This document shows positions 1,833 through 53,500 of a DNA stretch of 64,000 nucleotides, in pieces. Positions within the stretch are counted from its first letter, which is position 1; each line of letters starts with the position of its first letter. Position numbers and translations under genes: made by a program. Below the pieces are notes generated by a model. That model saw only the letters and a program-made list of their open reading frames with translations. It was not told where the DNA came from and ran no database searches. Source of the DNA: Dendrobates tinctorius (taxonomy: Eukaryota); the NCBI RefSeq assembly GCF_039654945.1, contig NW_027361679.1, forward strand, positions 37,758,001 through 37,822,000, read 5' to 3'.

Positions 1833-3727
1833 TAATTTTTTATTTATATGTTGCATTCTTTTCCTTAACCACGACATGATGCATATGTACATCATATGTT
1901 GTGTCTCTGCCTCTGACGCGGGCATGGCGTGTTGTCCTGTGATGTTCTGTGGAATGATGCAGCTTTCAGGTCTCAGTTTCACCGAGGCCTTTTGGATACT
2001 CTCAAGGACACTCTGGCTCTCCATACGTCACCCAGTATACTGAGGGAGATCATGACTCAGGCCATTCGAATGGATTGCAGAATTCGAGCGAGAAGTGATG
2101 AACGACAAGGGGTTTCAGTCATCCTGCCCAAGTCTGTTCACTTGCCAGAAACAGAACTAAGGGAGGTTGGAGCAGCCCAGTTTCGGATCAGGGAGTTGTC
2201 GGTTTGATCTCGGACTCTGCATACTCCACCCTTTTTCTTGGGGAGGTCATGTCTCAGCCCACTTTCGGGTCATGGAGGGGAGGCGTCGAGGTGATCTCAG
2301 CCTCCGCTTTTATTGTGGTCATGCCAGACATTTTCTCAAAGACTGCTCGATACACCCTCAAGCCAGAAAGTCATCGGGGAACATCTTAAGTCTGGGTGAT
2401 GTTCGAGGAGGTCACCCAGACTTCCAGGTACCCTTTTACGTTGCAGATAAAGTATTGCTGAACATGGAACCTTGCTTTCAGAACCTTGGGTTATCTGCTC
2501 TTTCTTTTAATGACTGTGGGTCTGCTGTCAATTTGATATTGGACTGGTACTTAAATTAGGATTAGGGACAGTTAGATTGGAAAGACCCATTCAAATTGTT
2601 GCTATTGACAGGACACTGTTACTTGAGAACTTTGTCCAGCTGGTAATGGTGGAATTCACACTTAGAGTGGGATCTCTTCACTCGGAGTCCATCTCCTGCT
2701 ATGTTTTGGATAATTTACCTGATGAGTTGGTGTTGGGATATTCATGGCTACGTATCCATGATCCTGTTATTGATTGGGGTCGGAAGGATATTGTTAAATG
2801 GAGTTCCCACTGTCATAAGAATTGTCTTAGTTCTGTACGAATTTCCTCCGCTAGCCTGGAACATCTGCCGGCGTACCTGAAAGACTTTAGAGATGTGTTC
2901 TCGGAGAAAGAGGCAGAGATACTACCTCCCCATCATCCTTATGATTGTGCTATAAATCTGTTCATAATATCAAACTGCCAAAAGCTTGACTGTATAATTT
3001 GTCAGGACCTGAACGGACAGCTATAAAACAATATGTAAACAAAAGTTTACAGAAGAGTCATGTCCATCCTTCCTCCTCGCTTGTAGTTGTGTTGTTCTTT
3101 TTTGTGAAAGAGAAAGATTGTGGCCTCCGTCCTTTCCTCGATTTCCGTAAACTAAACAAAATTATGGTTAAGAATACTTTCCCGATTCCACTCTTCCCCG
3201 ACCTATATAATCAGCTTACGGGGGCTAAATGGTTTTCTAAACTTGACATTAGAGGGGCATCTGATCCATATCCGAGAGGGTGATGAGTGGAAAACAGCGT
3301 TTTTTATGTTGGAGGGTTTATTTGAAAATCTTGCCATGCCTTTTGGGTTAACCAATGCACCTGCAGTCTTTCAGAACTTTATGAATGACAACTTTCTGAC
3401 ATTATTGGAAGGTTTATTGTGGTATACCTTGATAATTCTAATTTTTTCAACTGATCTGGAGTCACACTACAAGCACGTTTGATTTGTTTTACAGAAACTC
3501 AGGGAAATTTTTTGCTAAATTGGAAAAATGTATTTTTTCTGTTCAGGAAATATCATTCTTGGGGTTTATTGTATCAGCTGAAGAGTTCAAGATGGACCCT
3601 GGGAAGGTGCAGGCTATAATTGATTGGGCTCAACCTCATGATCTGAAAGCATTGCAATGATTTCTAGGATTCGCTAATTACTGTAGAAAATTTATTAGGT
3701 GTTTTTTGCAGATCGTTAAACCACTTA

Positions 3728-4170
3728 GGCTAGTTTCACACTAGCGCTTTTGAGTGCAGCGACGGCCTGCGCACGGCCGCCGCTAAGCCCCGCCCCCTGC
3801 CACGCCTCCGCCGGTAGCTCCGCCTACCGGCGCATGACGCTGCATGCGTCCTGCGTCCCCTATCTTTATCACTGGGGGCACAGTCTGCGTTTGGCAGCGC
3901 ATGCGTCCTTTTGACGGTGCGCCGAGCGCAACCAAACTGCAGCAGGTTGCGTTTGGCGCAGGTCGGCGCACCGTCAAAAGGACGCATGCGCTGCCAAACG
4001 CAGACTGCGCACGGCCTGCGCCCCAGTGATAAAGATAGGGGACGCAGGACGCATGCAGCGTCTTGCGCCGGTAGGCGGAGCTACCGGCGAAGGTGCAGCA
4101 GGGGGCGGGGCTTAGTGGCGGCCGTGCGCAGGCAGTCGCTGCGCTCAAAAGCGCTAGTGTGAAACTAGCC
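3728..4170. mobile_element. Palindromic PIF/Harbinger-type MITE
   Basis: TIR GGCTAGTTTCACACTAGCGC and its reverse complement; TTA TSD; removing it restores the Gypsy codons KPLTDLT. Confidence 0.9.
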
Positions 4171-4530
4171 TTACTGACCTCACACATAAGGGAGCGAATC
4201 TTAAGGTTTGGTAGTTGGATGCTGTTGACTTCTTTGATAAATTAAAGGAGTGCTTCATGTCTGCTCCAGTTTTGATTCAACCCAATCTCCAGAAACCATT
4301 TATCGTAGAGGTAGATGCCTCACAGGTTGGGGTAAGGGCTGTTTTGTCTTAAGGTTCCAAAACTCTAACCAACTTGCGACCATGTGCATTTTTCTGTAGG
4401 AAATTTTCGTCTCGTGAGAGAAATTATGATGCTGGGAATTGTGAGCTGTGAGCTGCGAGCTGTTATGCCAGCGTTTGAAGAATGAGGACTTTTTTGGAGG
4501 GAGCTATTCATCCGGTTACTGTGGTAACAG

Positions 4531-5298
4531 TGTAGGGAAGGTGACCGGACGGACTAGTCAGAGTGAAGAAGGAAAGGTTTGCACAGTGTAGGTAGGTGTC
4601 AGTTATTACAGTGGGGAAACGGCTAGGAAAGTGTATGTAGTGGACGTGCAGTACCTTGGGTTGACCATTAGATGGCAGGGAGGAGTGTGAGCAAAGGACT
4701 TGACAACAGCTTAGGGCTTTAGAAACAGTTGGTCATGGGGGGCGGGTTTACAGTGACAGGGGACCGGGAGAGCTATAAATACTGAGGGAGGGTTCCAGAA
4801 GGTTCCAGTCCCCAGGGGGAGCTCCAGTGACAGGAGGACTGCGACAGTCTGTGCGCTGTGAGGAGAAACTAAACAAGGGGGACTGAGGAGAGAGAACGTC
4901 AGGGGGGTGGTCCTGACAGGAAGAACCGCTGAAGGGACGAGGCATTGGGTGTGAGACACCGTATTTGACACGACGACTGATCAGAGGAAGCGCTGTTGGT
5001 TTAAGGGCCTAAGGCGGCCACAGTGACGGACCTGTCAGGAGCGTCGACGAGTGAAGAGGGGACGGTGTACGCATACACGTCCCCAGTGTAACGTGCGGTG
5101 TGTAAGAAGCGGCCCTGGAAACGGAGGGCCGTGAGGTAAAGGAAGTGCGGTGTGCTTCTGAGGCCGTCAGGCGAACGGCAAGTGAGAAATAAACTTGGAC
5201 TTGTTGCACCCAGAATCTGCCTCCATCGTGTCTCTGTTTTTATCTCTGCGTGGTAAGAAGAGGGACCACCCCCCCAGCTCGGCCCACCCACCTCTACA
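4531..5298 (+). mobile_element. Solo LTR
   Basis: TGTAG...CTACA ends; ACAG TSD; TATAAATA at ~4774; AATAAA at ~5188; removing it restores VTVVTDHK. Confidence 0.9.
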
Positions 5299-5756
5299 AC
5301 AGATCATAAAAAATTAGCTTATACTGAATCTGCTAAACGTTTAACCCCTGGACAGGCCAGATGGTCCTTATTTTTTTCTAGAATAAATTTTTCCATCACA
5401 CTCAGACCCGGTGCCCCGGTTGGGGCTGACGCAGTGTCCCGCAGCCTTGATTCCATTTTTCAGAGAGAATCTCTATTCTCTATTCTTCCCCAAGGAATTA
5501 TTTCAATGATATCCTCAGAATTGGAAACTGAAATTCATGAGGTCCAGTCGTTGGCCCCATCCGCTGCTCCTGACTCTAAATTATTTGTGCCTTTGTATCT
5601 ATTAGCAGAAGTTTCATTATTCCTTCTTAATTGGTCATCCGGGGGTCACTGCTGCACAGAAAGCTGTTGCTAGACTTTTTTGGCAACCATGCTTAACAAT
5701 CTTAATGATTTTGTATCCGCTTGTTAGGTTTGTGCACGTGCTAAAGTTTGTCATAC

Positions 5757-6085
5757 TGCAAAAGGGGAAGGGTGGGGGGAGGGGAAGCGGAGAGGGATGG
5801 GGGGAGGTGGATGGGGCGGATTTGTAGGGAGATGGGGGTTTTCATGCTGTTTGACCAGGTATGATTGGGACCACAATGTAATGATGTTACTTGATGATGA
5901 TGGATTGTTCTTTCTAATGCACAATGAGTAACCGTACTGTTCGGATGTTAAGTTGGAATGTACGTGGTATATCTGATAAGGTTAAGAGGGCGGCTGTTCT
6001 GAATCATATCAAATCCTGTGAACCTATGATCGCGTGCTTGCAGGAGACACATCTCACTAGAGACACTATGCACTGGTTGTCAAGA
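5757..6085 (+). mobile_element. Internal fragment of an L1-clade LINE (G-rich inter-ORF spacer plus the first ~54 codons of the ORF2 endonuclease)
   Basis: MSNRTVRMLSWNVRG...ACLQETHL are APE endonuclease motifs I and II. Confidence 0.8.
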
Positions 6086-7000
6086 TTCACAGATTTACCA
6101 GTGGAAAAGCCAAACTTCACATGCCACAAATGCAAGCTTGTGTCCCTGTTGGAGGAAAAGTTGCAAAATCTCGAAGAGAGGTTAGCTACGTTGAAGATCA
6201 TTAAGGAAGGTGAAGAGTTCTTGGACAGAGCAGAATTATCTCTTCATGTTACAGAAAGAGAAGAAATTCGAAGTGCACCTGAAGAAACAGAGGAATGGAG
6301 ACATGTGACCCAGAGAAGCAGGAGGATCAGGAGGCAGTCAGCACCCATACTGCTCAGGAACCAGTACCAGGCTCTCACGCAGGAAAACGATGAAGAAATA
6401 CATCAGGATAAGACTTTGCCAACAAACAGCAACCTTGTACGCCCTCAGAGTCATCCTGGATGGAGAAAGAAAAATGTTGTGAAGAAGAAACGGAGAGTGG
6501 TGGTCATGGGGGATTCCCTGCTGAGAGGAACAGAGGCCGCTATCTGCAGACCGGATATAACTACAAGAGAAATGTGCTGTCTTCCAGGTGCAAAAATTAA
6601 AGATGTGTCTGACAGGATATCAGGACTCTTCAGACCTACAGATGACTACCCATTCCTGCTACTACATGTGGGGACAAATGACACCGCAAGAAACGACCTG
6701 GAAATCATCTGCAGAGACTTTGAAGACTTAGGCAAGAAAGTGAAAGAACTGGGAGCGCAGGTGGTCTTCTCTTCCATCCTCCCAGTGGATGGCCATGGAA
6801 CAAGGAGGTGGAATAAGATTCTGCAGGTGAACAACTGGCTACGTCGATGGTGCCGTCAGCAATGATTTGGATTTCTGGATCACGGAGTGAACTACTTATA
6901 CGATGGACTACTTGCTAGAGATGGGGTGCACCTTACGAAGACTGGAAAGCATGTATTTGGAAGTCGCCTTGCTACACTTGTAAGGAGAGCTTTAAACTAG
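5924..7000 (+). pseudogene. Chimeric L1-EN/CR1 ORF1 (partial zinc finger, coiled coil, SGNH esterase) with one premature TGA at 6863-6865
   Basis: CHKC, a leucine-zipper stretch, GDSLLRG, HVGTND; after the TGA the frame continues to DGVHL...RRALN* at 7000. Confidence 0.85.
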
Positions 7001-9998
7001 AACAACATGGGAAGGGAAGCAAAAGACCAGAAAAAGCCATACACCTGACAAATGCTATTGAGAACTCTGCTATTAGAAGTGGAAAGGAAGAACAAAGACG
7101 AAAGAATCTAATTAATAAAAATATTGGAGAAAGAGAAACCAATCACAAACTAAAATGTTTCTATACTAATGCACAAAGCATGGGCAACAAACAAGGAGAA
7201 TTGGAACTACTAACACAGGAACAGAAATATGATGTAATTGGAATCACTGAAACTTGGTGGGACAATACACATGATTGGAATACAAGACTAGAAGGATACA
7301 ACTTATTTGCAAGAAACAGACTTGATAAACGAGGAGGGGGTGTCGCATTGTATGTTCGAAACGCGTATATCTGCACAGAGATTGAAGCTTCAGAGACTGG
7401 GAGTTCTGTGGAAACTGTTTGGGTAAGAATACAAGGACAGAACAATGGAAAGGACACCATTGTAGGCATTTACTACAGGCCGCCTGTGCAAGCCGAAGAT
7501 ATAGATGAACTCTTTATGCATCAGATGGCCAAGTTCTCCAAAAAATATGACATAGTTGTCATGGGAGATTTCAACTATCCAGACATTTGTTGGGAATCTC
7601 TCTCAGGCAAAACTAACAGGTCAAGGAAATTCTTATCCTCTCTTGCTGACAACTTTATCTTCCAAAAGGTAAGGGAGAAAACAAGGGGAACTGCTACCTT
7701 GGATCTAATCCTTATAAACAGGGAGGAAATGGTTGAGGAGGTAAAAGTGGCTGGGACCCTAGGAGGTAGCGACCATGCTATTTTAGAATTTTGGATTACT
7801 AGAGGTGGAAGACCTGTGAAGACTCAGACGTCAAGGTTAGATTTCAGAAAGGCAGATTTTAAGCGATTCAGAAAGAGAATTGGAGGGATCCAATGGCTGG
7901 ATATCCTTAAAGACAAAAATGTCCAGGAAGGATGGGAAATTTTGAAAAATGAAATTCTCAAAGCACAGTTGTTAACAATTCCGAAAAGAGGGAAGAATAG
8001 GAAGCATTTAAGGAAACCAGGATGGATGAACACAGAACTTAAGCACATGCTAAAAAGGAAGAAAAAAATGTTTATAAAATGGAAAGAGGGAGGCATATCT
8101 AAAGAAGAATATAATGCTGTCTGCAGAACCTGCAGGGCACAAATCAGATTAGCTAAAGCTGAAAATGAACTGAGGCTTGCAAGAGATGTCAAAAGCAATA
8201 ATAAAGGATTTTGGGGATATGTCAAAAGTAAAAGAAAAGTCAAAGATGCTATAGGATATTTACAGGATGAAAATGATGAAATGGTAAGACAGGATGTTGA
8301 AAAGGCTGAACTTTTAAATTCCTATTTTGCATCTGTTTTCTCTCAGAAAGGAAATGCAACATCAACTGTTATTCACTGTCCTATTAAGGGAATAGAAGAA
8401 TCCAGGATATCTATAAACAGAAAGATAGTGAGGAAACACTTAGCTAACCTAAATGAATTCAAGTCTCCAGGTCCAGATGAATTACACCCCAGAGTACTGA
8501 AGGAGATAGCAGAAGAAATTTTTGAACCCCTCTCCATAATCTTTGAAAATTCTTGGAGAACAGGAGAAGTGCCAGAAGACTGGAGAAGAGCAAATGTTGT
8601 TCCTATCTTCAAAAAGGGGAAGAAGGTGGACCCAGGCAACTATAGGCCGGTGAGTCTGACTTCCATACCAGGAAAGATCTTTGAACAAATTATTAAACAA
8701 CATGTATGTCAATACCTGGATAATAATGAAGTGATTAAACAGAGTCAGCATGGGTTTGTAACTAATAAGTCATGTCAGACTAACTTAATTTCCTTCTATG
8801 ACTGTATCACTGATTGGGTGGATCAAGGAAATGCTGTAGATATAGTATATCTTGACTTCAGCAAAGCATTTGACAAAGTCTCTCATACAATCCTTATTGA
8901 AAAAATGACTAAGTATGGAATGGACAAGGCAACTGTTAGGTGGATTCATAACTGGCTTAGTGATCAGACCCAAAGAGTGGTCGTAAATGGCTGCACATCC
9001 AGTTGGAAGAATGTCTCAAGTGGGGTACCACAGGGCTCTGTCCTGGGCCCTGTATTGTTCAACATCTTTATCAACGATTTAGATGAAGGAATTGAGGGTA
9101 AACTGATTAAATTTGCTGATGACACAAAGCTAGGAGGGATAGCTAATACTAGAGAAGAGAGAGAGAGGATTCAAAAAGATTTAAATAAACTGGAGAAGTG
9201 GGCAGCAACTAACAGAATGGTTTTTAACAGGGAGAAATGCAAAGTACTACATCTGGGCAATAAAAATGAAAAAAGCATATATAGAATGGGAGGAATAGGG
9301 CTAAGTGACAGCACATGTGAAAAAGACTTGGGTATACTAATAGATCACAGACTGAATATGAGTCAACAGTGTGATGCAGCAGCAAAAAAGGCAAATGCAA
9401 TTCTAGGATGTATTAACAGAAGCATACAGTCTAGATCACGTGAAGTCATTATTTCCCTCTACTCCTCTTTGGTCAGACCTCATCTGGAATATTGTGTCCA
9501 GTTTTGGGCACCACATTTTAAAAAAGACATCAACAAACTGGAGCAAGTTCAGAAAAGAGCGACCAGAATGGTGACCGGTCTGCAAACCCTGTCTTATGAG
9601 GAAAGGTTGCAGGATTTGGGAATGTTTAGTTTGCAAAAGAGAAGACTGAGAGGTGACTTAATAGCTGTCTACAAATATCTAAAGGGCTGTCACATTGTAG
9701 AAGGATCAACTTTATTCTCAATTGCACAAGGAAAGACTAGAAGCAATGGGATGAAACTGAATGGGAAGAGACACAGATTAGATATTAGAAAAAACTTTTT
9801 GACAGTTAGAGTGATCAATGAGTGGAACAGGCTGCCACGAGAAGTGGTGAGTTCTCCTTCAATGGAAGTCTTCAAACAGAGGCTGGACAGACATCTGACT
9901 GGGATGATTTAGCGAATCCTGCTTTGAGCAGGGGGTTGGACCAGATGGCCCAGGAGGTCCCTTCCAACTCTACGATTCTATGATTCTATGATTCTATG
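6086..9998 (+). mobile_element. Young, slightly 5'-truncated CR1 LINE
   Basis: ORF1 plus intact ORF2; short 3' UTR; terminal (ATTCTATG)x3 at 9975-9998. Confidence 0.95.
6991..9912 (+). CDS. CR1 ORF2 (APE endonuclease plus reverse transcriptase), uninterrupted
   Basis: Frame open from ~6919; YTNAQS, ITETWW, GDFN, SDH, DFSKAFD, VPQGSVLGP, FADD. Confidence 0.93.
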   Translation, partial: FKLEQHGKGSKRPEKAIHLTNAIENSAIRSGKEEQRRKNLINKNIGERETNHKLKCFYTNAQSMGNKQGELELLTQEQKYDVIGITETWWDNTHDWNTRLEGYNLFARNRLDKRGGGVALYVRNAYICTEIEASETGSSVETVWVRIQGQNNGKDTIVGIYYRPPVQAEDIDELFMHQMAKFSKKYDIVVMGDFNYPDICWESLSGKTNRSRKFLSSLADNFIFQKVREKTRGTATLDLILINREEMVEEVKVAGTLGGSDHAILEFWITRGGRPVKTQTSRLDFRKADFKRFRKRIGGIQWLDILKDKNVQEGWEILKNEILKAQLLTIPKRGKNRKHLRKPGWMNTELKHMLKRKKKMFIKWKEGGISKEEYNAVCRTCRAQIRLAKAENELRLARDVKSNNKGFWGYVKSKRKVKDAIGYLQDENDEMVRQDVEKAELLNSYFASVFSQKGNATSTVIHCPIKGIEESRISINRKIVRKHLANLNEFKSPGPDELHPRVLKEIAEEIFEPLSIIFENSWRTGEVPEDWRRANVVPIFKKGKKVDPGNYRPVSLTSIPGKIFEQIIKQHVCQYLDNNEVIKQSQHGFVTNKSCQTNLISFYDCITDWVDQGNAVDIVYLDFSKAFDKVSHTILIEKMTKYGMDKATVRWIHNWLSDQTQRVVVNGCTSSWKNVSSGVPQGSVLGPVLFNIFINDLDEGIEGKLIKFADDTKLGGIANTREERERIQKDLNKLEKWAATNRMVFNREKCKVLHLGNKNEKSIYRMGGIGLSDSTCEKDLGILIDHRLNMSQQCDAAAKKANAILGCINRSIQSRSREVIISLYSSLVRPHLEYCVQFWAPHFKKDINKLEQVQKRATRMVTGLQTLSYEERLQDLGMFSLQKRRLRGDLIAVYKYLKGCHIVEGSTLFSIAQGKTRSNGMKLNGKRHRLDIRKNFLTVRVINEWNRLPREVVSSPSMEVFKQRLDRHLTGMI

Positions 9999-12900
9999 AC
10001 CGGGCCAATTTTTACAATTCTGACCACTGTCCCTTTATGAGGTAATAACTCTGAAACGCTTCCATGGATCCCGGTGATTCTGACAGTTTTCTCATGACAT
10101 ATTGTACTTCATGTTAGTGGTAAAATTTCATTCAAATAACTTGCGTTTATTTGTGAAAAAAACGGAAATTTGGTGAAAATTTTGAAAATTTTGCAATTTT
10201 CCAACTTTGAATTTTTATGCCCTTAAATCACAGAGATACAGCATACAAAAAACTTGATAAGTAACATTTCCCACATGTTTACTTTACATCAGCACAATTT
10301 TGGAACCAAAATTTTTTTTTGTTAGGAAGTTATAAGGGTTAAAAGTTGACCAGCGATCTCTCATTTTTGCAACACCATTTTATTTTTACGGACCACATCA
10401 CATTTGAAGCCACTTTGCGGGGTCTATATGATAGAAAATACCCAAAAGTGACACCATTCTAAAAACTGCACCCCTTAAGGTGCTCAAAACCACATTCAAG
10501 AAGTTTATTAACCCTTTAGGTGCGTCACAGGAATTTTTTGAATATTTAAAAAAAAAAATGAACATTTAACTTTTTTTCACAAAAAAAATACTTCAGGTTC
10601 AATTTTTTTTATTTTACCAAGGGTAACAGGAGAAATTGGACTGCAAAAGTTAATGTGCAATTTGTCCTGAGTATGCTAATACCTGATATGTGGGGGGGAA
10701 CCACTGTTTCGGCGCATGGCAGAGCTCAGAAGGGAAGGAGCGCCGTTTGACTTTTTCAATGCAAAATTGGCTGGAATTCAGATCAGACGCCATATCGCAT
10801 TTGGAGAGCCCCTGATGTAACTAAACAGTGGAAACCCCCCACAAGTGACACCATTTTGGAAACTAGACCCTCCAAGGAACTTATCTAGATATGTGGTGAG
10901 AACTTTGAACCCCCAAGGGCTTCACAGAAGTTTATAACATACAGCCGTACAATTAAAAAATCATATTTTTTCCACAAAAATGATCTTTTCACCCTCAATT
11001 CTTATTTTCCCAAGGGTAACAGGACCCTAAAAGTTATTGTGCAATTTTCCCTGAGTACGCTGATACCCCACATGTGGGGGTAAACCACTATTTGGGCGCA
11101 TGGTAGAGCTCGGAAGGGAAGCAGCGCCATTTGAAGGTTTTGGCTGGAATTGAGATCGGACACCATGTTGCGTTTGGAAAGCCCCTGATGTACCAAAACA
11201 GTGGAAACCCCCACAAATGACACCATTTTGGAAACTAGACCCCCCAAGGAACTTATCTATATGTGTGGTGAGAACTTTGAACCCCCCAGTGCTTCACAGA
11301 AGTTTATAATGTCTGGGCGTGAAAATAAAAAAATCGTATTTTTTCCACAAACATGATCTTTTAGTCACCAATTTTTTTATTTTCCCAAGGGTACCAGGAG
11401 AAATTGGACCCCAAAAGTTGTTGTCCAATTTGTCCTGAGTACAATGATGCCTCATATGTGGGAGAAAACTACTGTATGGGCACACGTCGGGACTCGGAAG
11501 GGAAGTAGTGACGCTTTGGAATGCAGACTTTGATGGAATGGTCTGCGGGTGTCATGTTGCTTTTGGAGAGCCCCTGATGTGCCTAAACAGTGGAAACCCC
11601 CCACAAGTGACCCCATTTTGGAAACTAGACCCCCTAAGGAACTTATCTAGATGTGTGGTGAGCACTTTGAACCCCCAAGTGATTCACAGAAGTTTATAAC
11701 GCCCGGGCGTGAAAATAAAAAAATCATTTTTTTCCACAAAAATGATATTTTTGCCCCCAATTTTTTTATTTTCCTAAGGGTAATAGGAGAAATTGGACCC
11801 CAAAAGTTGTTTTGCAATTTGTCCTGAGTAGGCGGATACCCTATATGTGGGGGTAAAACACTGTTTGGGCGCATGGCAGAGCTTGGAAGGGAAGGAGCAC
11901 CATTTGACTTTTTCAACGCAGAATTGTCTGGAATTGAGATCAGATGCCATGTTGCGTTTGGAGAGCACCTGATGTGCCCAAACAGTGGAAACCCCCCAAT
12001 TCTAACTCCAACCCTCACCCCAACACACCCCTAACCCTAATCTCAGCCCTAATCCTAACCCTAACCCTAATGGGAAAATGGAAACAAATACATTTTCTTT
12101 TTATTTTATTATTTTTCCCTAACTAAGGTGGTGATAACGGGGGGTTTGAGTTACTATTTATAGCGGGTTTTTATGTTTGGCAGCTGTCGCACGCTAAAAG
12201 ACGCTTTTATTGTAAAAATAGTTTTTGCATCACCACATATTGAGAGCTATAATTTTTCCATATTTTGACCCACTGAGTCATGTGGGGTCTTATTTTTTGC
12301 GGGACGAGTTGACGTTTTTATTGATGCCATTTTCGGGCACGTGACATTTTTTGATCGCTTTTTATTCTGATTTTTGGGACGCAGAATGAATAAAAACCAG
12401 CGTTTCATGAATTTCTTTTGGGGGGTGCATTTACACCGTTCCACGTGCTAAATTGATAAAGCGGTTTTATTCTTCGGATCAGTACGGTTACAGCGATACC
12501 TCATTTATGTTGTTTTTTTATGTTTTGGTGGTTTTATGCAATGAAAACTATTTTATATCAAAAATAATTATTTTTGCATCGCTTTATTCTGTGAGATATA
12601 ACTTTTTTATTTTTTCACTGATGATGCTGTAAGGCAGCTCATTTTTTGCGGGACAAGATGACGTTTTCAGCGGTACCATGGATATTTATATGCGTCTTTT
12701 TGATCGCGCGTTATTGCACTTTGTTTTTTGCTTCGTTTTTTATTTTTATTTTTTAAGGGGTTCGCTAAAGGGGTTAACTAATGGGACAGTTTTATAGGGC
12801 AGGTCGTTATAGACGCGGCGATACCAAATATGTGTACTTCTATTGTTTTTTTTCTTTTTTTCTTTCCAAAAAATGAATTTATTGGGAAATATTTTTTTTT

Positions 12901-44500: not shown

Positions 44501-47500
44501 AGAGAAGACCATGGAAGTCGGAAAAAGGATTGCAGGAAAGGGGATGTAAAAAGTTAGCTGTAGTGTGATGGGTTAGGACAGACTGAAGGGTGGACCAATT
44601 GATTCAGGTATTATTGTACAAGTTTGATTCATTTGCAAATCAATTGCTCCCCGCATTGGATGTAGGCCACTTCATATAAGGAGGTTCTGTAGAATTCTGT
44701 AGAATTCCAGTGCCTGAAGATAACAGTTTTAAAGCTTGTAGGTGGCTATAATTTAAAACAACACAGTAGAAGAGAACGTAAAGTCATGTAAGTGTGCTGC
44801 AGAGAGAACAATGCTATAACTATGAAACACATTTCACCTGCTTTCTTTTGCATTTGATTTTCATAGGTCCTTACAATATTTTCAGCTTCAAATTATTATG
44901 AAATTGGCAGTAATAAAGGGGCATATGTAAAGCTGGGTCCTGATCTGGTCCCTCATTTTGTGCAGTACCAAGCAAACAAGTCTACAAACACTCTTACTTT
45001 AAGGCAAAGGTACTGTTCTGTGGACACATAGTATTAATCTTTACCAATATGGGGTCCAGGTTTCTTAGTCTTTGTATGTATTTTGTGTTCCAGAGTAAGT
45101 ACAGTAGAAGCTTCTGCACTCAGGGCCTTAAGGGAGAAGCTATTTGCTCATAAATCAGATCTCATCCAGGAATTCAACAGATATGACAAGAATAAGTCTG
45201 GTAAATCAAATAGCGCTTGACCTTCACAGAAGAAATCTTTATCTAATATGTAGAAGTCCATAGTCAATCTTGAGGTTTGCATGCTAGAGTCTATTTTGTG
45301 ATAAGCATCTTAAATCGTATAGCATTTGGTTTACCTATACAGGACATATTACACTACATGACTGGGCAACTGCACTAGAATCCATCCTTAATCTCGGCCT
45401 GCCCTGGAGAATGCTTAGGCCACAGCTTGTCCGAAATGCAACAGATGGACTGTTAAGATACAAAGAATGGTTTGATGAACTTGCTGTGTGCCAATCAGTA
45501 AGAGAGGTAAAAATGATTTGGGGGGTTTGGTGGTTTAGTTGAATTCTTTCAATATAAGGTGCTTGTTAGACGACTACATTGCTTGAATTGAGGCTGGGGG
45601 GGTACATTATCTGTGAGTGTGAATGGGTTTATACTTTTGTGTTTGAAGCCAAACTGTAATGGCAACATTATATTCTGACTTTGATCCAAGTACTTAAAAG
45701 AAGATGTCTCCTGTTAAATGCGATTGTACTTCGGACTCTTCCTTGTTATCACCCTGTTCTATGTGGACTTCACCCCCACCAAGCCCATTTTCACCTTAAT
45801 GACCAGGCTATATTTTACAATTCAGACCAGTGTCACTTTATGATGTAATAACTCAGAACTCTTCAACGGATCTCAGTGATTCTGAGCCTGTTTTCTTGTG
45901 ACATATTGTACATTATGATCGTGGTAAAATTTGCTTGATACGACTTGCGTTTATTTGAGAAAGTATTGGAAATTTGGGGAAAATTTTGCAATTTCAAGCT
46001 TTTGAATTTTTATGCCCTTAAACCAGATAATTACAGTGGGGAAAATAAATATTTGATACACTGACAATTTTGCAAGTTTTCCCACCTGCAACAAATGGAG
46101 AGGTCTTTAATTTTTATTGTAGGTACACTTTAACTGCAAGAGACAGAATCTTAAAAAAATCTAGAAAATCACATTATATCATTTTTACATAATTAATTTG
46201 CATTTTATTGCATGAAATAAGTATGTGATACAATAGAAAAACAGAACTTAATATTTGATAAAGAAATGTTTGTTTGCAATTACAGAGGCCAGACGTTTGC
46301 TGTAGTTATTGACCAAGTTTGTCCACACTGCAGCAGGGATTTTTGCCCACTCCTCCATACAGATCTTCTCCAGATCTTTCAGGTTTTGAGGCTGTCCCTG
46401 GGCAACATTGAGTTTCAGCTCCCTCCAAAGATTTTCTATTGGGTTCAGGTTTGGAGACTGATTAGGCCACTCCAGGACCTTAGAGACACTCCTTAGTATC
46501 CCTGGCTCTGTTTTTCGGGTCATTGGCATGCTGGAAGACCCAGCCCCGACCCATCTTCAATGCTCTTACAGAGGAAAGGATGTTGTTGTCCAAAATCTCG
46601 CGATACATGATCCCATCCATCCTCCTTTCAATGCAATGAAGTCATCCTGTCCCCTTTCCAGAAAAGCACCCCCAAAGTATTGTTTCCTCCATAATGCTTC
46701 ACGATTGGGACAGTGTTCTTGGGGTTGTACTCATCATTCTTCTTCCTCCAAACACAGCGAGTAGAGTGGATACCAAAAAGTTCTATTTTGGTCTCATCTA
46801 ACCATATTACCTTCTCCCATGTCTCCTATGGATCATCCAGATGGTCATTGATGAACTTCAAACGGGCCTCAACATGTGCTCTCATGAGCAGGGGGACCGT
46901 GCTTATCCTACAGAATTTTAACCCTTTAATGATAGCCAATACATCTTTTTACTGATCTGAGATATAAGAGACTAGCATCCCCATACAGGTGACAATTCAG
47001 CAGCTATTGGCTGTCCGCTATAACTGACAACTTGCTGCATCATCCACGGTTAGTGTTGGCACCGTCCTCATCTGTTTAACCCCTTAGATGCTGCTGTCAA
47101 TAGTGACTGCTTCATATAAATGGTTAGCAGAGTGTGGGGGCTTCCTCTTTAACCCCATCGGCACCCTGAGATCATGATTGTGTGGCCCTGATGTTTGCCA
47201 TGGCAATTCACAGCCAAATAGCGGCCTTAGAGTCTTCCGGCTACAGTGGCCTGTTCAGAAGTTAGTGACATTTAAGTGGTAAAAATACATTTTTTCATTC
47301 CTGTCATGCCAATTTGCATTCATTCCTTAACATCACCTGAAGGGTTAATAAAATACCTGACCGCAGTTTTCAATGTCAAAGGTTGCTATTTTAAAATGGT
47401 ATCACTTTTGGAGGTTTTACAATATATAGGACCCCAAAAGTCACTTCAAACCTGGATAGGTCCTTCAAAAAATAAGTTTTGCAAATTTCCTTGAAAAAAT

Positions 47501-50500
47501 TAAAAATGACTGCTACATTTGTAAAACTCCTAAAAGGCTAACAAAATAAAAGAACATTTTACAAATGGTGCTGATGTAAAGCCGACATGTGGGAAATGTT
47601 ATTTATCAATGCTTTTGTGTGGTATGACTATCTGGATTAAAGGGATAATCATTCCAAGTTTGAAAATTGCAATTTTGTTTTACATTTTTGTCAAATTTCT
47701 GATATTTTTTATAAATAAACACAAAACATATAGAAATAAATTTACATTAACAAAGTACAACATGTCACTAAAAACAATCTCAAAATCATTGGGATCTGTT
47801 GAACCATTCCAGAGTTATTACATCATAAAGGGACACTGGTCAAATTTCTAAAATTTGGCCCTATCACTAAGGCACCGTCAAGCTACGCTGTTATCCGTGA
47901 CAGCGTGACAGCATAGCGTGTTACTAAAGGTAATGTTTGAGACTGTGGTCTCAATTCTCTTCAGGTCATTGACCAGGAACTCCCATGCAGTTCTGGGCTT
48001 GTTCCTGACCTTTCCCAGAATTGGTGGAGATGTTGGAGTGTGACTGAGTGTGTGGACAGGTGTTTTTTTACAGGTAACGAGTTCAAACAGGTGCAGTTAA
48101 TACAGGTAATGAGTGCAGCGTAAAAGGGTTTCTTAAAGAAAACTAACGGGTCTGCGAGAGCCAGAATTCTTGCTGGTGATCAAATACTTATTTCATGCAA
48201 TAAAATGCAATTTAATTAAGTAAAAATCATTCAACGTGATTTTCTGGATTTTTTTTCAAATTCTGTCTCTCACAATAGAAGTGAAAAAATTACAGACCTC
48301 TGCATTTTTGTAGGTGGGAAACTTGCAAAATTGGCAGTGTATCAAATACTTATTTTCACCACTGTATGTCACACAAAATAGTTAATAAATAACATCTACC
48401 ACATGTCTACATCTGTATCATTTTTTAAACTTTTTTTTTGGAAGTTAAAAGGGTTAAATTTTGATCAGCAATGTCTCATATTTCCATCAAAATTTACAAA
48501 ACCTTTTTTTAGAGCCACATCAAAATTTAAGTGGCTTTGGGGGCCTATATGATAGAAAATACCAAAAGTAATACCATTCAAAAAACTGCACCCCTGAAAG
48601 TCCCCAAAACCACATTCAATAAGTTTATAAACCCTTCAGGTGTTTCACAGGAATAAATGGAATGTGGAAGGGAAAGAAAATACATTGTGCTTTTTTTTCA
48701 CAAAAATTTTTCTTTAGCTCAAAACTTTTTATTTTCACAAGGGTAATAGGAGAAAATGCACCATACAGTTTGTTGTGCAATTTCTCCTGAGTACGCCAAT
48801 ACCTAATATGTGGAGTAAAACTACTGTTTGGGCGCACAGTAGAGCTCGGAAGGGAAGGAGCACCATTTAACTTTTTGAATGCAAAATTTGCTGAAATCAT
48901 TAGCGGACACCATGTCGCGTTTGGAAAGCCCCTGTTGTGCCTAAATAGTGGAAATCCCCCACAAGTGACCCCATTTTATAACTAGACCCCTCAATGAATG
49001 TATCTAGATGTGTGATGAGCACTTTGAACCCCAAGGTGATTCACAGAGTTTTATAATGTAGAGCAGTGAAAAATGTTCGTTTTGACTCAATTTTTTTATT
49101 TTAACAAGGATAATAGGAGAAAATGGAACTCAAAATTTGTTGTGCAATTTTTCCAGAGTTCGCAGATGCCACATCTGTGGGGGAAAACTACTGTTTGGGA
49201 GCACAGCAGGACTTAGAAAGGAAGAAGTGACGTTTTGGAATGCAGACTTTGGTGGAATGTCTGTGAGCGTCATGTCATGTTTGGAGAGCCCCTAATGTGC
49301 CTAAACAGTGAAACCACCCCACAATTACCCAGTTTTAGAAACTAGACCCTGATGGACCTGAGTGAGGACTTGCATGTTTTGTGGCTTGAGTTGAAGCATT
49401 TGTTGGGAACATTTTACATAACATTTTGGATCACATTTATCTGGCGCTCTACACTGAGCACTTACTTTGGGGTTTCCATCTAAATCTTAGAATGATGTGA
49501 TTCAGATGAAACCCTGAGGGATCCATTCACTATAATGAGACAGCAGAGTTTCTCTGGACTCTGTCTGGCCTCTGTTCAACAGTCTCCTTTTCAGAGGTGC
49601 ACAAAACTGAGGTTGACTATATTTTTATGCATGCCTAAAAAGAGGGACACCGCCAGATCATAGGCCAAGCAGCGTCAACTCTGTCCCCACCTGCCTCATT
49701 ATAGGGAATCTTCTGGCAGGGGCTTTCTGAATCACGTATTCCAGAGATTTACACTGAAACCGTGGTGTAAGCACTCAGCGTAGACCACAGGATAAATGTG
49801 AGCCGAGGCTTACCACAATCTTTGCAAGGCAGAATGAAAAAGTCAGCAGCAGGTGAAGAATTTTTATGATTTATTTATTTTTTTCTTTAAATCAAAATAA
49901 AGCTTTTTTTTAACAAAAAAAGTCATAGAAAGTTATATTCCACTTCCATGGTGCTATGTAGTATAACAGAAATATAATAATGTGGTATAATATAAAGCAA
50001 ATAGAGCAGGCTGTAGGCTGACATATATTAAAAACTCGTTCATACGTGTCCCTTCTCTGTCACTGTTCTCCTGCCATAAAGTGATTGTTCACTTATGAAC
50101 ACCATTTGAGACTTAATATAGTTATAGGGCTCACATGACAACTTTTTTCTTTTAAATTAAAATATGCAAATAAACATTTTTATGACAAGTACAAATCTAA
50201 AAAAAGAGAAAATCAAAAGGTATAAGTGACATATTAAAGTGCACACAGCAAGTAGTAGAGGATGGACCCATAAAAGTCCCAGAGTTCTGCCTCAGAACTT
50301 CTTCTTAGTATTTCAGATTGAGGTGTTTAGGCATTTCAGAGCGCGAACAGCATTCTTTCTACTGGTAATCATTATGTAAGAACACATCAGTTGTGCTACT
50401 GGTATTGTGCAGGACACTTACTTTGTGCAGTGTCCAATGAAAAGGTCACACTTACCAGAATTGACAAACAGAAAAAATATTAATTCTATATAATTATAAT

Positions 50501-53500
50501 TCAATATAATTTCTATATATATAATTACCCATTATTTTTGCTACCCATAAACCATTTCCTGCTGTTACATGCTGGTATGTATGTGTGTTGCAAAGAGTCT
50601 CCTTTTTTCTATTTCCATGAGCTTTGTTATCCATATTCTGTAAGCATATTCTCACACACTTCATGGCATATCATTTTTATCATTTGCAGAACTTACATTC
50701 CAGTCTGCTTGAGGTTCTCTATAGAAACAGATCAGACCTGGAAACAATATTTCGGATTATTGATAGTGACAGCTCAGGTGAGTATGAGTGTTGCATCTAT
50801 CAATAACAGGTATGCATTATGCTAATATTTTTATTTGTAGTGGTGCCGATAGACCTCTGCTGTACTAACAGTTCTACTGGAAAAAAAATCAGAAGAAACT
50901 TGGATGTAATATTTGGCTAAAAAGGAGTACTAAAGTATTCATGCTTCATATTGGATGATACACTTCCTGTGGCTCTCAGGATGCTCAGGCTGTAGGATGG
51001 TTTTGTAGGCTATGTTCACATCATGTTTTAGCCACTGAAAAACAGGATTCAGGCATATCCACCAACAAGGCCAGTGACTTTAATAAAGCAGATTGATAGA
51101 CTTTGTGCTCTGTCTGACACCCTTTTCCAGATGGGTACAAAAAAAGTGGTTGACTGCATTTTTTTGACCAGGGCCGGTACAAAGTACTTTGGTGCCCGAG
51201 GCATATGAAACCAAAGGCACGCTCCCAACCCACCACAAAGCAAAGGAATGGCTCAGAGACAACGGTAACAGAAACACTAATTCTAATCCCCCTTCCCCTC
51301 TGAAGGGTTAGGTAGAAAACTCTGATGATCACTTCCACTAGTATTGTTACTTTTTTCACAATTTTTTTTTAATCAAAAGTAAAAAAATGTGGTGTACTTT
51401 ATGGATGTGAGTTTACAGGGAGTGCAATTTCAAAGTTAGATACAGATATTCATCCCTGAAAGCCTATATTTTAAATGTAGAACCCAAAGATAGTTATGGA
51501 AGATAATAAAGAGTAACTATAATTGGGGTATTTTGGTTTCAATTAAGGTGTTCAGCAAATACTCTAATGGAAAATGAGCAAACCCCCATTATAAATAAAA
51601 TGGATACGTATAATGGTTTTTGCATCTGTCATGCAACAAATACAGCTTGTACACTGATGGTAGTTCTGGTGATATATTCATGTGGCGATTGTTGTTTTGG
51701 TGCTGTATTCATGTACGGTTGATGATTCTGGTGATATGTTAACCCCTTAGTGAAACCCTTTTTGCAGCTTAATGACCAGGCCAATTTTTACAATTCTGAC
51801 CACGGTCACTTTATGAGGCTATAACTCTGGAACTCTATAACGGATCCCGCTGATTCTGAGATTGTTTTTCTCGTGACATATTGCACTTCATGCTAGTGGT
51901 AACAATTCTTCGATATGACTTGTGTTTATTTATGAAAAAAACGGAAATATGGCAAAAACATTTAACATTTTGCAATTTTCAAACTTTAAATTTTTATGCC
52001 CTTAAATCAGAGAGATATGTCACATAAATTACTTAATAAATAACATTTCCCACATGTCTACTTTACATCAGCACAATTTTGGAAACAATTTTTTTTTTTA
52101 ATTAGGAAGTTATAAGGGTTAAAAGTTGACCAGTGATTTCTCTTTTTTACAACAAAACTTAGAAAACCATTTTTTTAGGGACCACATCACATTTAAAGTC
52201 ACCTTGAGGGGTGTACATGACAGAAAATATGCAAAAGTGACACCATTCTAAAAACTGGACCCCTCAAGGTGCTCAAAACCACATTCAAGAAGTTAATTAA
52301 CCCTTTATGTGCTTCACAGGAACTGAAGTAATGTGGAAGGAAAAAATTAACAATTAACTTTTTTTCCCCAAAAATTTACTTCAGAACCAATTTTTTTTAT
52401 TTTCACAAGTGTTGAAAGAGAAAATGAACCCCAAAAGCTGTTGTGCAATTTGTCCTGAGTATGCCAATACCACATATGTGAGGGTAAACCTATGTTTGGG
52501 TGCACGGCAGAGCTCGGAAGGGAAGAAGCGCTGGTTTGACTTTTTCAATGCAGAACTGGCTGGAATTGAGATCGGATGCCATGTTGCCTTTGGAGAGCCC
52601 CTGATGTGCCTAAACAGTGGAAACCCCACAAGTGACACCAATTTGGAAACTAGACCCCCTACTGAACTTATCTAAATGTGTGGTGAGCACTTTGAACCCC
52701 CAAGGGCTTCACAGAAGTTTATAAAGTAGAGCCGTGAAAAAATATATATATTTTTCCCACAAAAATGATCTTTTCGCACCAAAATTTTTATTTTCACAAG
52801 GGTAACAGGAGAAAATAGACCACAAAAGTTGTTGTGCAATTTATTCTGAGTACGCCAATACCCCATATGTGGAGGCAAACCACTGTTTGCGTGCACGGTA
52901 GAGCTCAGAAGGGAAAGAGTTCCGTTTTGGAATTTAGACTTTGATGGAATGGTCTGCGGGCATCATGTTGAGTTTGCAGAGCCCCTGATGTGCCTAAACA
53001 GTAGAAACCCCCACCAAGTGACCCCATTTTGGAAACTAGACCCCCCAAGGAACTTATCTAGATGTGTTGTGAGAACTTTTAACCCCCAAATATTTCACTA
53101 AAGGTCATAACGCAGAGCTGTGAAAATAAAAAATCATATTTTTTTCCCACAAAAATGATTTTTTAGCCCGCAATTTTTTATTTTCACAAGGGTAACAGGA
53201 GAAATTGGACCCCAAAACTTGTTTTCCAAATTGTCCTGAGTACGCTGGTACCCCATATGCGGGGCGGGGGGGACCACTTTTTTTTAAGCACACGTCGGAG
53301 CTCGAAAGGGAAGTAGTGACTTTTGGAATGCAGACTTTGATTAAATGGTCTGTGGACATCATGTTGCATTTGGAGAGCCCCTGATGTGCCTAAACAGTAG
53401 AAACCCCCCCACAAGTGACCCTATTTTGGAAACTAGACCAACCAAGGAGCTTATCTAGATGTGTGGTGAGCTCTTTGAACCCCCTAGTGTTTCTCAGAAG

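What the first reader, a model, noticed from the sequence alone, without database searches (positions are those of the whole stretch)
5757..6200. In-frame chimera of two LINE clades: L1 endonuclease N-terminus fused to CR1 ORF1
Seen: ORF 5924-6865 begins with an L1-type endonuclease start (SWNVRG...LQETHL), preceded by a G-rich spacer. At ~6085 it switches without a frame break to CR1 ORF1 (FTDLP...CHKC), which has lost its first CxxC. Established: retrotransposed LINE copies keep their 3' ends, so an isolated internal L1 piece is abnormal. Inference: the CR1 reverse transcriptase switched template onto an L1 RNA, or repair captured L1 cDNA, giving the truncated CR1 a new ATG.
Basis: partly seen in the sequence, partly recalled or inferred. 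Interest (0 to 1): 0.7.

Follow-up and report, generated by a model that had tools for sequence, protein, structure and literature searches.

The report
One-off L1 piece fused to CR1
In a poison-frog genome, a 331-base internal piece of a young L1 jumping gene is joined head-to-tail and in frame to a nearly full-length CR1 jumping gene; it is most likely a single dead-on-arrival copying accident of a known kind, and I found no sign that it has spread.

Summary
Window 5755-6085 is an internal piece of a young, multi-copy L1-type element. It covers 169 nt upstream of ORF2 plus ORF2 codons 1-54. Window 6086-~9999 is a CR1 that lacks its 5'UTR and its first 16 codons. A full-length sister copy from Dendrobates tinctorius (L001, 98.7% identical) starts MEEARSHLVSCISCYM|FTDLP. 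In the window those 16 residues are replaced by 54 L1 endonuclease residues, in frame.

Contigs from other sequencing runs carry the same 331 nt with 2-3 differences and continue as L1 on both sides. Neither L1 continuation occurs anywhere in the 64-kb window. The two halves have similar loads of private changes (about 0.6-0.7%).

The best reading (about 0.55) is one insertion event. The CR1 reverse transcriptase, or an RNA or cDNA joining step, continued from CR1 RNA onto L1 RNA. Three rivals remain open:
- A pre-existing L1 was partly deleted when the CR1 inserted.
- The copy descends from an L1-driven nested CR1 source locus.
- The junction is a misassembly.

The "new ATG" has no shown function. 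The copy has no promoter and its ORF1 carries a nonsense mutation. I found no second copy, but the genome itself could not be searched. This is a new member of a known kind and of modest interest.

The parts
5504..5754 (.). Upstream flank U: a non-coding, moderately repeated sequence that is interrupted at 5755. Other copies in a related frog continue with ACCGGCCGG...
   Evidence: depth about 200-400 against about 2.5-5 for unique contigs. Contigs X5 rec17 and X17 rec9 end their match at 5755, and 16 X5 contigs continue with an unlike consensus. No Pfam or Rfam hit. No other copy in the window.
5755..6085 (+). Internal piece of a young multi-copy L1-type LINE, 331 nt, cut at both ends.
   Evidence: a 2798-nt contig (X5) and a 3750-nt contig (X8) match 5755-6084/6085 with 3 and 2 differences and continue on both sides. 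The sequence behind 6085 reads AWMLKTYHST in the ORF2 frame. Both L1 continuations are absent from the window.
5755..5931 (+). G-rich stretch of the L1 piece. One frame is open throughout and ends at TAA 5929-5931, overlapping the ORF2 ATG (ATGAGTAA). It is either the tail of L1 ORF1 or an inter-ORF spacer.
   Evidence: frame 0 has no stop. No Pfam family.
5924..6085 (+). L1 ORF2 codons 1-54, the N-terminus of the APE-type endonuclease (SWNVRG...CLQETHL).
   Evidence: human L1 ORF2p EN residues 4-52, E 3e-7. (Exo_endo_phos profile positions 1-51, E 0.0016). (51-59% identity to EN fragments).
6085..6086 (+). L1/CR1 junction: blunt, with no filler and no microhomology. L1 would continue with G; CR1 is preceded by ...CTACATG.
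   Evidence: loose ends at 6085 behind and 6086 before.
6086..9999 (+). CR1 LINE lacking the about 337-nt monomer-repeat 5'UTR and ORF1 codons 1-16. It ends in (GATTCTAT)x3.
   Evidence: 98.7% to L001:6049-9955. (L001 5'UTR and start codon). (tail).
6086..7000 (+). CR1 ORF1 remainder (zinc knuckle, coiled coil, SGNH esterase), with a CGA>TGA nonsense at 6863-6865. The natural stop is TAG 6998-7000.
7180..9912 (+). CR1 ORF2 (APE endonuclease plus reverse transcriptase), 910 aa from the first ATG. It is intact and differs at 19 residues from the L001 copy.
9996..12065 (+). Downstream flank D: a different repeat family with copies at 51772-53835, 45799-46036 and 47861-47334(-). It starts about 20 nt inside the family's 5' end.

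Best explanation
This is a single, non-propagating retrotransposition accident. A CR1 RNA was reverse-transcribed from its 3' octamer tail at a nick near window 9996. About 385 nt short of the CR1 5' end, synthesis continued on an L1 RNA at ORF2 codon 54. That step could have been a template jump by the reverse transcriptase, prior ligation of two broken RNAs, or capture of an L1 cDNA during repair. Synthesis ran 331 nt towards the L1 5' end. The cDNA end was then joined to the upstream chromosome at 5754/5755 through 1 nt of overlap, probably with loss of some target DNA. The in-frame L1-EN/CR1-ORF1 reading frame is a by-product with no function. Shown: the anatomy, the exact breakpoints, the multi-copy young L1 and CR1 parents, and the absence of the rest of the L1 from the window. 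Inferred: that both pieces arrived in one event, and the template-switch step itself.
For: The breakpoint is exact. CR1 homology to the full-length sister L001 starts at 6086, and the canonical start MEEARSHLVSCISCYM is replaced. The L1 piece is internal: long contigs in two other runs carry 5755-6085 with 2-3 differences and continue as L1 on both sides. The two pieces share orientation and abut with no filler. Neither L1 continuation (30-mers, up to 3 mismatches) is in the 64 kb, and tblastn finds no further L1 endonuclease. So simple nesting is excluded in this allele. The ages match: the L1 piece has 2 private changes in 331 nt (5811, 5857), and CR1 6086-6800 has at least 5 in 715 nt where the family majority agrees with L001 (table 3). 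Both parent families are young and abundant in the same genome (depths; 98.7% between CR1 copies), so both RNAs could be present together. The U/L1 junction is carried by a contig at single-copy depth (2.5) from the probable source sample (X1 rec1). LINE reverse transcriptases are known to produce head-to-tail chimeras of this kind (PMC2104539, PMC4476161), and RNA ligation before reverse transcription is a documented alternative route (PMC6789731).
Against: No target-site duplication of 9 nt or more brackets the L1+CR1 block. The sequence that follows U in other copies is not found after the CR1 tail or anywhere else in the window. The downstream repeat D lacks its first ~20 nt. So some target DNA was lost, and the limits of the event cannot be proven. 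The acceptor point on the L1 RNA is internal rather than a natural RNA 3' end, which end-to-end template jumping would favour. There is no microhomology at the L1/CR1 junction. No read or contig was shown to span 6085/6086. Single-copy status rests on weak negatives only: no such protein on record, L1 contigs that run unbroken through the junction, and no other note in this scan.
Confidence: 0.55

Rival explanations
1. There were two events with a deletion. A 5'-truncated young L1 (from the 5755 position to its 3' end) was already sitting in repeat U. The CR1 then inserted downstream, and either its 5' end was joined back inside the L1 at ORF2 codon 54, deleting the L1 3' part and adjoining DNA, or a later deletion ended at the CR1 tail.
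For: The U/L1 junction at 5755 with 1 nt of overlap looks like an ordinary 5'-truncated LINE junction. Target DNA seems to be missing in any case: the U continuation is absent and D lacks about 20 nt of its 5' end. No target-site duplication was found. Large target deletions at LINE insertions are established for mammalian L1 (from my own knowledge, not checked here). Insertion of a 5'-truncated LINE into another LINE is the route to hybrids proposed in PMC4120745 and inferred for the cattle L1-BovB element (PMC6036668).
Against: It needs two independent recent insertions of young elements within a few kb of each other in a roughly 6-Gb genome. It also needs a deletion whose edges coincide with the CR1 5' end and, for a later deletion, with the last base of the CR1 tail. 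The L1 piece is no older than the CR1 (about 0.6% against 0.7% private changes). No trace of an L1 3' part or poly(A) lies next to the CR1 tail.
Confidence: 0.17
2. The window copy is a daughter of a chimeric source locus elsewhere. There, a 5'-truncated CR1 sits in sense orientation inside a full-length L1 at ORF2 codon 54. A transcript driven by the L1 promoter was retrotransposed by CR1 proteins through the CR1 3' tail and 5'-truncated at 5755. The in-frame L1 ATG would allow translation of the shortened ORF1 and, through the UUUAAAC -1 frameshift site, of ORF2.
For: The fusion is in frame. The slippery heptamer plus stop is intact at 6991-7000, and the ORF2 frame is open from there to 7180. 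ORF2 is intact. The 5' end at 5755 looks like a normal 5' truncation joined with 1 nt of overlap. This route needs no unusual enzymatic step.
Against: No second copy was seen. No chimeric protein is on record among 77 relatives. L1 contigs in three runs pass through position 6085 without a break, and every loose end listed in front of 6086 (the best-supported rows only; 773 further rows not shown) is the canonical CR1 5' sequence. Being in frame has a 1 in 3 chance anyway. The expected number of such source loci is small.
Confidence: 0.12
3. The junction is an assembly artefact. The 6085/6086 join comes from a chimeric read or a mis-join between an L1 copy in U and a CR1 copy located elsewhere.
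For: Both elements are young, high-copy repeats, which are hard to assemble. No read or contig crossing 6085/6086 was listed.
Against: Assemblers mis-join through shared repeats, not at a point where two unrelated sequences meet bluntly. The neighbouring U/L1 junction is confirmed by a single-copy-depth contig. The probable source runs hold 83-86% of the sampled words of 5500-6400.
Confidence: 0.06

Closest known systems
Bipartite and tripartite chimeric retrocopies made by LINE reverse transcriptase template jumps (human U6-L1 and mRNA-L1 chimeras; MGL LINE chimeras of Magnaporthe, PMC2104539; U6 pseudogene survey, PMC4476161)
   Same: Two different transcripts are copied head-to-tail in the same orientation. 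The 3' part is a 5'-truncated LINE with its own intact 3' end, and there is no filler at the junction.
   Different: Here the 5' partner is an internal fragment of another autonomous LINE from a different clade, not a small RNA or an mRNA 3' end. The driver is CR1, not L1. No flanking target-site duplication could be shown.
U6/L1 chimeric RNA made by RtcB ligation before retrotransposition (PMC6789731)
   Same: This gives an RNA-level route to the same DNA product. It would explain a blunt junction at internal (broken) RNA ends without microhomology.
   Different: It has been shown only for U6 with its 2',3'-cyclic phosphate end. Nothing here tests for ligation.
Chimeric L1-BovB element of cattle (PMC6036668)
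   Same: It is a hybrid of two LINE clades that are active at the same time in one genome. Both parts are 97-98% identical to their active families, and it was found as an isolated curiosity.
   Different: The cattle element was interpreted as an L1 inserted into a BovB, and it keeps two RT domains. The frog case keeps only 331 nt of L1, with neither L1 end.
Hybrid LINEs and reticulate ORF1 evolution in CR1 and L2 (PMC4120745)
   Same: A 5'-truncated CR1-group element acquires foreign 5' coding sequence from another LINE. That is the proposed raw material for ORF1 shuffling.
   Different: Those are established families with functional new ORF1s. This copy gains a non-functional 54-residue endonuclease stub and shows no sign of spread.

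Membership tests
L1-clade LINE (the 5755-6085 piece) | ORF2 begins with an APE-type endonuclease whose N-terminus is closest to L1 ORF2p | tested here: met
   residues 2-50 align to human L1 ORF2p EN residues 4-52 (E 3e-7); APE1/ExoIII come next at E 0.008 or worse. Exo_endo_phos profile positions 1-51, below the cut-off; 51-59% identity to EN-domain fragments.
L1-clade LINE (the 5755-6085 piece) | The piece is colinear with a longer multi-copy element that continues as endonuclease | tested here: met
   contigs of 2798 and 3750 nt hold the piece with 3 and 2 differences. The continuation behind 6085 stays open in the ORF2 frame.
L1-clade LINE (the 5755-6085 piece) | The reverse transcriptase domain groups with the L1 clade | not testable with these tools
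   The piece has no RT, and the parent contigs seen cannot be fetched as sequence.
L1-clade LINE (the 5755-6085 piece) | Own 3' end (3'UTR and A-rich tail), as retrotransposed copies keep | tested here: not met
   The piece stops at ORF2 codon 54. The L1 continuation is absent from the window. This is the anomaly itself, and it marks a fragment rather than an L1 insertion.
CR1-clade LINE (6086-9999) | ORF1 of the esterase (SGNH) type behind an N-terminal cysteine motif | tested here: met
   98% to P0001, and 45-66% to turtle, lizard, bird and crocodilian proteins that carry PF13472. This copy scores below the Pfam cut-off because of its premature stop. [quoted passage not shown]
CR1-clade LINE (6086-9999) | ORF2 with an APE endonuclease plus reverse transcriptase | tested here: met
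   RVT_1 E 2.4e-36; Exo_endo_phos E 4e-16.
CR1-clade LINE (6086-9999) | 3' end made of an octamer microsatellite instead of poly(A) | tested here: met
   (GATTCTAT)x3 at 9973-9996. L001 has the same unit twice. That the octamer is a CR1 hallmark comes from my own knowledge. PMC13343379 says poly(A) occurs only in Zenon among CR1-group elements.
CR1-clade LINE (6086-9999) | Complete 5' end (monomer-repeat 5'UTR and the ORF1 start codon) | tested here: not met
   the about 337-nt 5'UTR and codons 1-16 present in L001 are missing. This is a 5'-truncated copy.
Template-switch chimeric retrocopy | Two unrelated transcripts fused head-to-tail in the same orientation, with a 5'-truncated LINE carrying its own 3' end as the 3' part | tested here: met
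Template-switch chimeric retrocopy | One target-site duplication bracketing the whole chimera (a single integration) | tested here: inconclusive
   no direct repeat of 9 nt or more between 5700-5760 and 9990-10030. The flanks belong to unrelated repeats, which suggests loss of target DNA.
Template-switch chimeric retrocopy | An empty orthologous site lacking both parts | not testable with these tools
   No frog genome collection can be searched by DNA, and the single reads call was already used.

The most novel reading that the evidence does not exclude
The copy belongs to a small, still mobile hybrid lineage. A CR1 that lost its own promoter and start codon is transcribed from an L1 promoter and translated from the L1 ORF2 ATG. 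The in-frame fusion feeds ribosomes through the shortened ORF1 to the UUUAAAC -1 frameshift site and so into ORF2. One LINE clade would then be parasitising the 5' control region of another.
Probability: 0.1. Interest if true: 0.65.

Novelty: new member of a known kind. Interest (0 to 1): 0.3.

Why it matters
Chimeras between two autonomous LINE clades are rarely documented. They are the proposed raw material for the shuffled, reticulate 5' ends and ORF1s seen in CR1 and L2 evolution. This is a cleanly resolved, young example: both parent families are still recognisable at about 99% identity and the breakpoints are known to the base. If an empty site confirms a single event, it would be direct genomic evidence that a CR1 reverse transcriptase (or an RNA or cDNA joining step) can continue onto another LINE's RNA in a vertebrate germ line. 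As a single, promoterless copy with a nonsense mutation in ORF1, it has no expected biological effect on the host.

Tried and rejected
- Normal CR1 consensus: the idea that 5924-6085 is part of it is rejected. The full-length sister L001 and seven other CR1 ORF1 proteins start differently.
- Simple nesting, with the L1 remainder after the CR1 tail, is rejected for this allele. The downstream DNA is another repeat family. The L1 continuation 30-mers are absent, and tblastn with an L1-type endonuclease found nothing more.
- U and D as two halves of one repeat that would define an empty site: not supported. The U continuation 20-mer is absent. The shared CTTAATGA 8-mer is no better than shuffled controls. 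U has no other copy in the window or in L001.
- Target-site duplication search: nothing of 9 nt or more at either candidate boundary.
- Upstream flank as L1 ORF1 or another known element: no Pfam or Rfam hit.
- Fetching the parent L1 through proteins: the word search limited to residues 1-56 gave only 51-59% identical short Logan fragments.
- The large HMMER search was not run. The operators called it costly, and the claim does not rest on it.
- Exact-protein look-up of this copy's ORF2: not on record.
- Phage collection search of 5700-6200: no match, as expected, and uninformative.
- Earlier notes of this scan by words and by sequence: nothing on a second chimera.
- Two paper-reading runs and one other failed on term syntax.

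Full report
**What is there**

The window comes from a dendrobatid frog. The best protein match of the ORF is a Dendrobates tinctorius protein at 98% identity, and notes from this scan name the dyeing poison frog.

ORF 5924-6865 (313 aa) exists as described. Its first 54 residues (MSNRTVRMLSWNVRGISDKVKRAAVLNHIKSCEPMIACLQETHLTRDTMHWLSR) match the start of the Pfam endonuclease/exonuclease/phosphatase profile, positions 1-51, below the curated cut-off. Among solved structures they align best to residues 4-52 of human LINE-1 ORF2p endonuclease (E 3e-7). APE1-type nucleases follow at E 0.008 or worse.

From residue 55 the ORF is a CR1 esterase-type ORF1. P0001 of D. tinctorius aligns at 95-98% identity. 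Its own start is MEEARSHLVSCISCYM|FTDLPVEKPNFTCHKCKL, so the first CxxC is replaced and the second is kept.

**Exact breakpoints**

The genomic locus of P0001 (L001, GCA_039654945.1) holds a full-length CR1 with these parts:
- a 5'UTR of about 337 nt built from about 125-nt tandem units;
- ORF1 of 320 aa;
- ORF2 of 910 aa;
- a (GATTCTAT)n tail.

L001:6049-9955 aligns to window 6086-9992 without gaps at 98.7% identity, and the alignment starts exactly at window 6086. The window CR1 therefore lacks the 5'UTR and codons 1-16. It has an intact 910-aa ORF2 and a CGA>TGA nonsense at 6863-6865 in ORF1.

**The L1 piece**

Contigs from four public runs were laid on 5300-6800. Window 5755-6085 is contained in a 2798-nt contig of a related organism (3 differences) and in a 3750-nt contig of another run of the same organism (2 differences).

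Both contigs continue with sequence unlike the window:
- Before 5755 they read ...GGGGAGAGAGTGACA.
- Behind 6085 they read GCCTGGATGCTAAAGACATATCATTCTACT, which stays open in the ORF2 frame (AWMLKTYHST).

Their contig depths (245 and 83, and about 520 in the probable source run against about 2.5 for unique contigs) indicate a multi-copy young family. The G-rich "spacer" is therefore L1 sequence upstream of ORF2. One frame is open across it and ends at TAA 5929-5931, overlapping the ORF2 ATG. It has no Pfam match.

The piece is internal and cut at both ends. Neither L1 continuation occurs anywhere in the 64 kb, and tblastn with an L1-type endonuclease finds nothing more.

**Flanks**

Upstream of 5755 lies a non-coding repeat (U). 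Its other copies run on past 5755 with ACCGGCCGG..., and that continuation is not in the window.

Downstream of the CR1 tail lies a different repeat family (D), with three other copies in the window. The copy here starts about 20 nt inside the family's 5' end.

U and D are unrelated. No direct repeat of 9 nt or more brackets either the L1+CR1 block or the CR1 alone. Some target DNA was probably lost, and the empty site cannot be reconstructed from this window.

**Junctions**

- L1/CR1 (6085/6086): blunt, with no filler and no shared base.
- U/L1 (5754/5755): one shared A.
- A 413-nt contig at single-copy depth in the probable source sample spans 5372-5784, so the U/L1 junction is real and single-copy there.
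- No listed contig spans 6085/6086. The run's contigs are expected to break at such repeat boundaries.

**Ages**

The L1 piece differs from all laid L1 contigs at 2 of 331 positions (5811, 5857). In CR1 6086-6800, at least 5 of 715 positions (6444, 6453, 6521, 6563, 6705) are private to this copy, because the family majority agrees with L001 (table 3). The loads are about 0.6% and 0.7%, which fits one arrival time. The counts are small, so the test has little power.

**Interpretation**

Simple nesting is excluded in this allele, and "part of the normal CR1" is excluded outright.

The most economical account is a single CR1 integration whose cDNA continued from CR1 RNA onto L1 RNA. That step could have been a template jump, ligation of broken RNAs before reverse transcription, or capture of L1 cDNA at the repair step. 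Such chimeras are known for LINE reverse transcriptases (PMC2104539, PMC4476161), and an RNA-ligation route is documented (PMC6789731).

Rough frequency arguments favour this reading over the main rival. That rival needs a young L1 already within a few kb, plus a deletion ending exactly at the CR1 5' end. These arguments are my estimates, not measurements. I give the single-event reading 0.55.

The rivals are:
- a pre-existing L1 with insertion-mediated deletion (0.17);
- a daughter of an L1-driven nested CR1 source locus (0.12);
- misassembly (0.06).

The remainder is unassigned.

**The "new ATG"**

Being in frame has a 1 in 3 chance. The copy has no promoter, and the 54-residue endonuclease stub cannot fold into an active domain. 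ORF1 is cut by a stop before the end of the esterase domain (alignment to P0001).

The frame matters only under the source-locus rival. This copy keeps the UUUAAAC-plus-stop motif at 6991-7000, and the ORF2 frame is open from there to 7180. Other agents of this scan proposed that motif as a -1 frameshift site. An upstream in-frame ATG could then in principle restore ORF2 translation.

**Is it a family?**

I found no second copy:
- The 64-kb window holds no second CR1 copy and no further L1 endonuclease.
- No chimeric protein appears among 77 relatives or in the N-terminal word search.
- This copy's ORF2 is not on record as a protein.
- L1 contigs in three runs run unbroken through position 6085.
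- Every loose end listed in front of 6086 is the canonical CR1 5' sequence; only the best-supported rows were listed, with 773 more not shown.
- There is no other note in this scan.

These are weak negatives, because the frog genome itself could not be searched by DNA with the tools at hand.

**Comparison with what is known**

Hybrids of two LINE clades have been reported, for example the cattle L1-BovB element (PMC6036668). Insertion of 5'-truncated elements into other LINEs has been proposed as the source of ORF1 shuffling in CR1 and L2 (PMC4120745). This is a new, cleanly resolved example of a known kind.

**Limits**

The parent L1 could not be fetched as sequence. No orthologous or alternative-haplotype locus could be examined.

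Noticed in passing
window 6991-7180: The CR1 ORF1 ends in an in-phase U_UUA_AAC heptamer followed directly by TAG (6991-7000). The ORF2 frame (-1) is open from the heptamer to the first ATG at 7180. This fits the programmed -1 frameshift that other agents of this scan proposed for frog CR1.
   Followed up: partly
L001:5664-6000: The full-length sister CR1 has a 5'UTR made of about 2.7 tandem units of about 125 nt. It sits inside a roughly 37-nt tandem array (CACATCCTTCTCCGGGGCCGGTAC...), so its apparent long target duplication is ambiguous.
   Followed up: partly
window 9996-12065, 45799-46036, 47334-47861(-), 51772-53835: An unclassified repeat family (D) of at least 2 kb has internal tandem units of about 375-400 nt (10555-12000). 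The family's 5' end is near ...CTTAATGACCAGGCCAATTTTTAC. No coding signal was examined.
   Followed up: no
window ~1900-3500: Broken ORFs on the + strand look by eye like Ty3/gypsy protease and reverse transcriptase (e.g. YVLDNLPDELVLGYSWL, FRKLNK, LDIRG). They suggest a degraded LTR retroelement upstream of the finding. No family scan was run on them.
   Followed up: no
window 5300-5400: A short stretch has very high contig depth (about 2900-4800, against about 200 for neighbouring repeats) in two frog runs. It is probably a very abundant small repeat.
   Followed up: no
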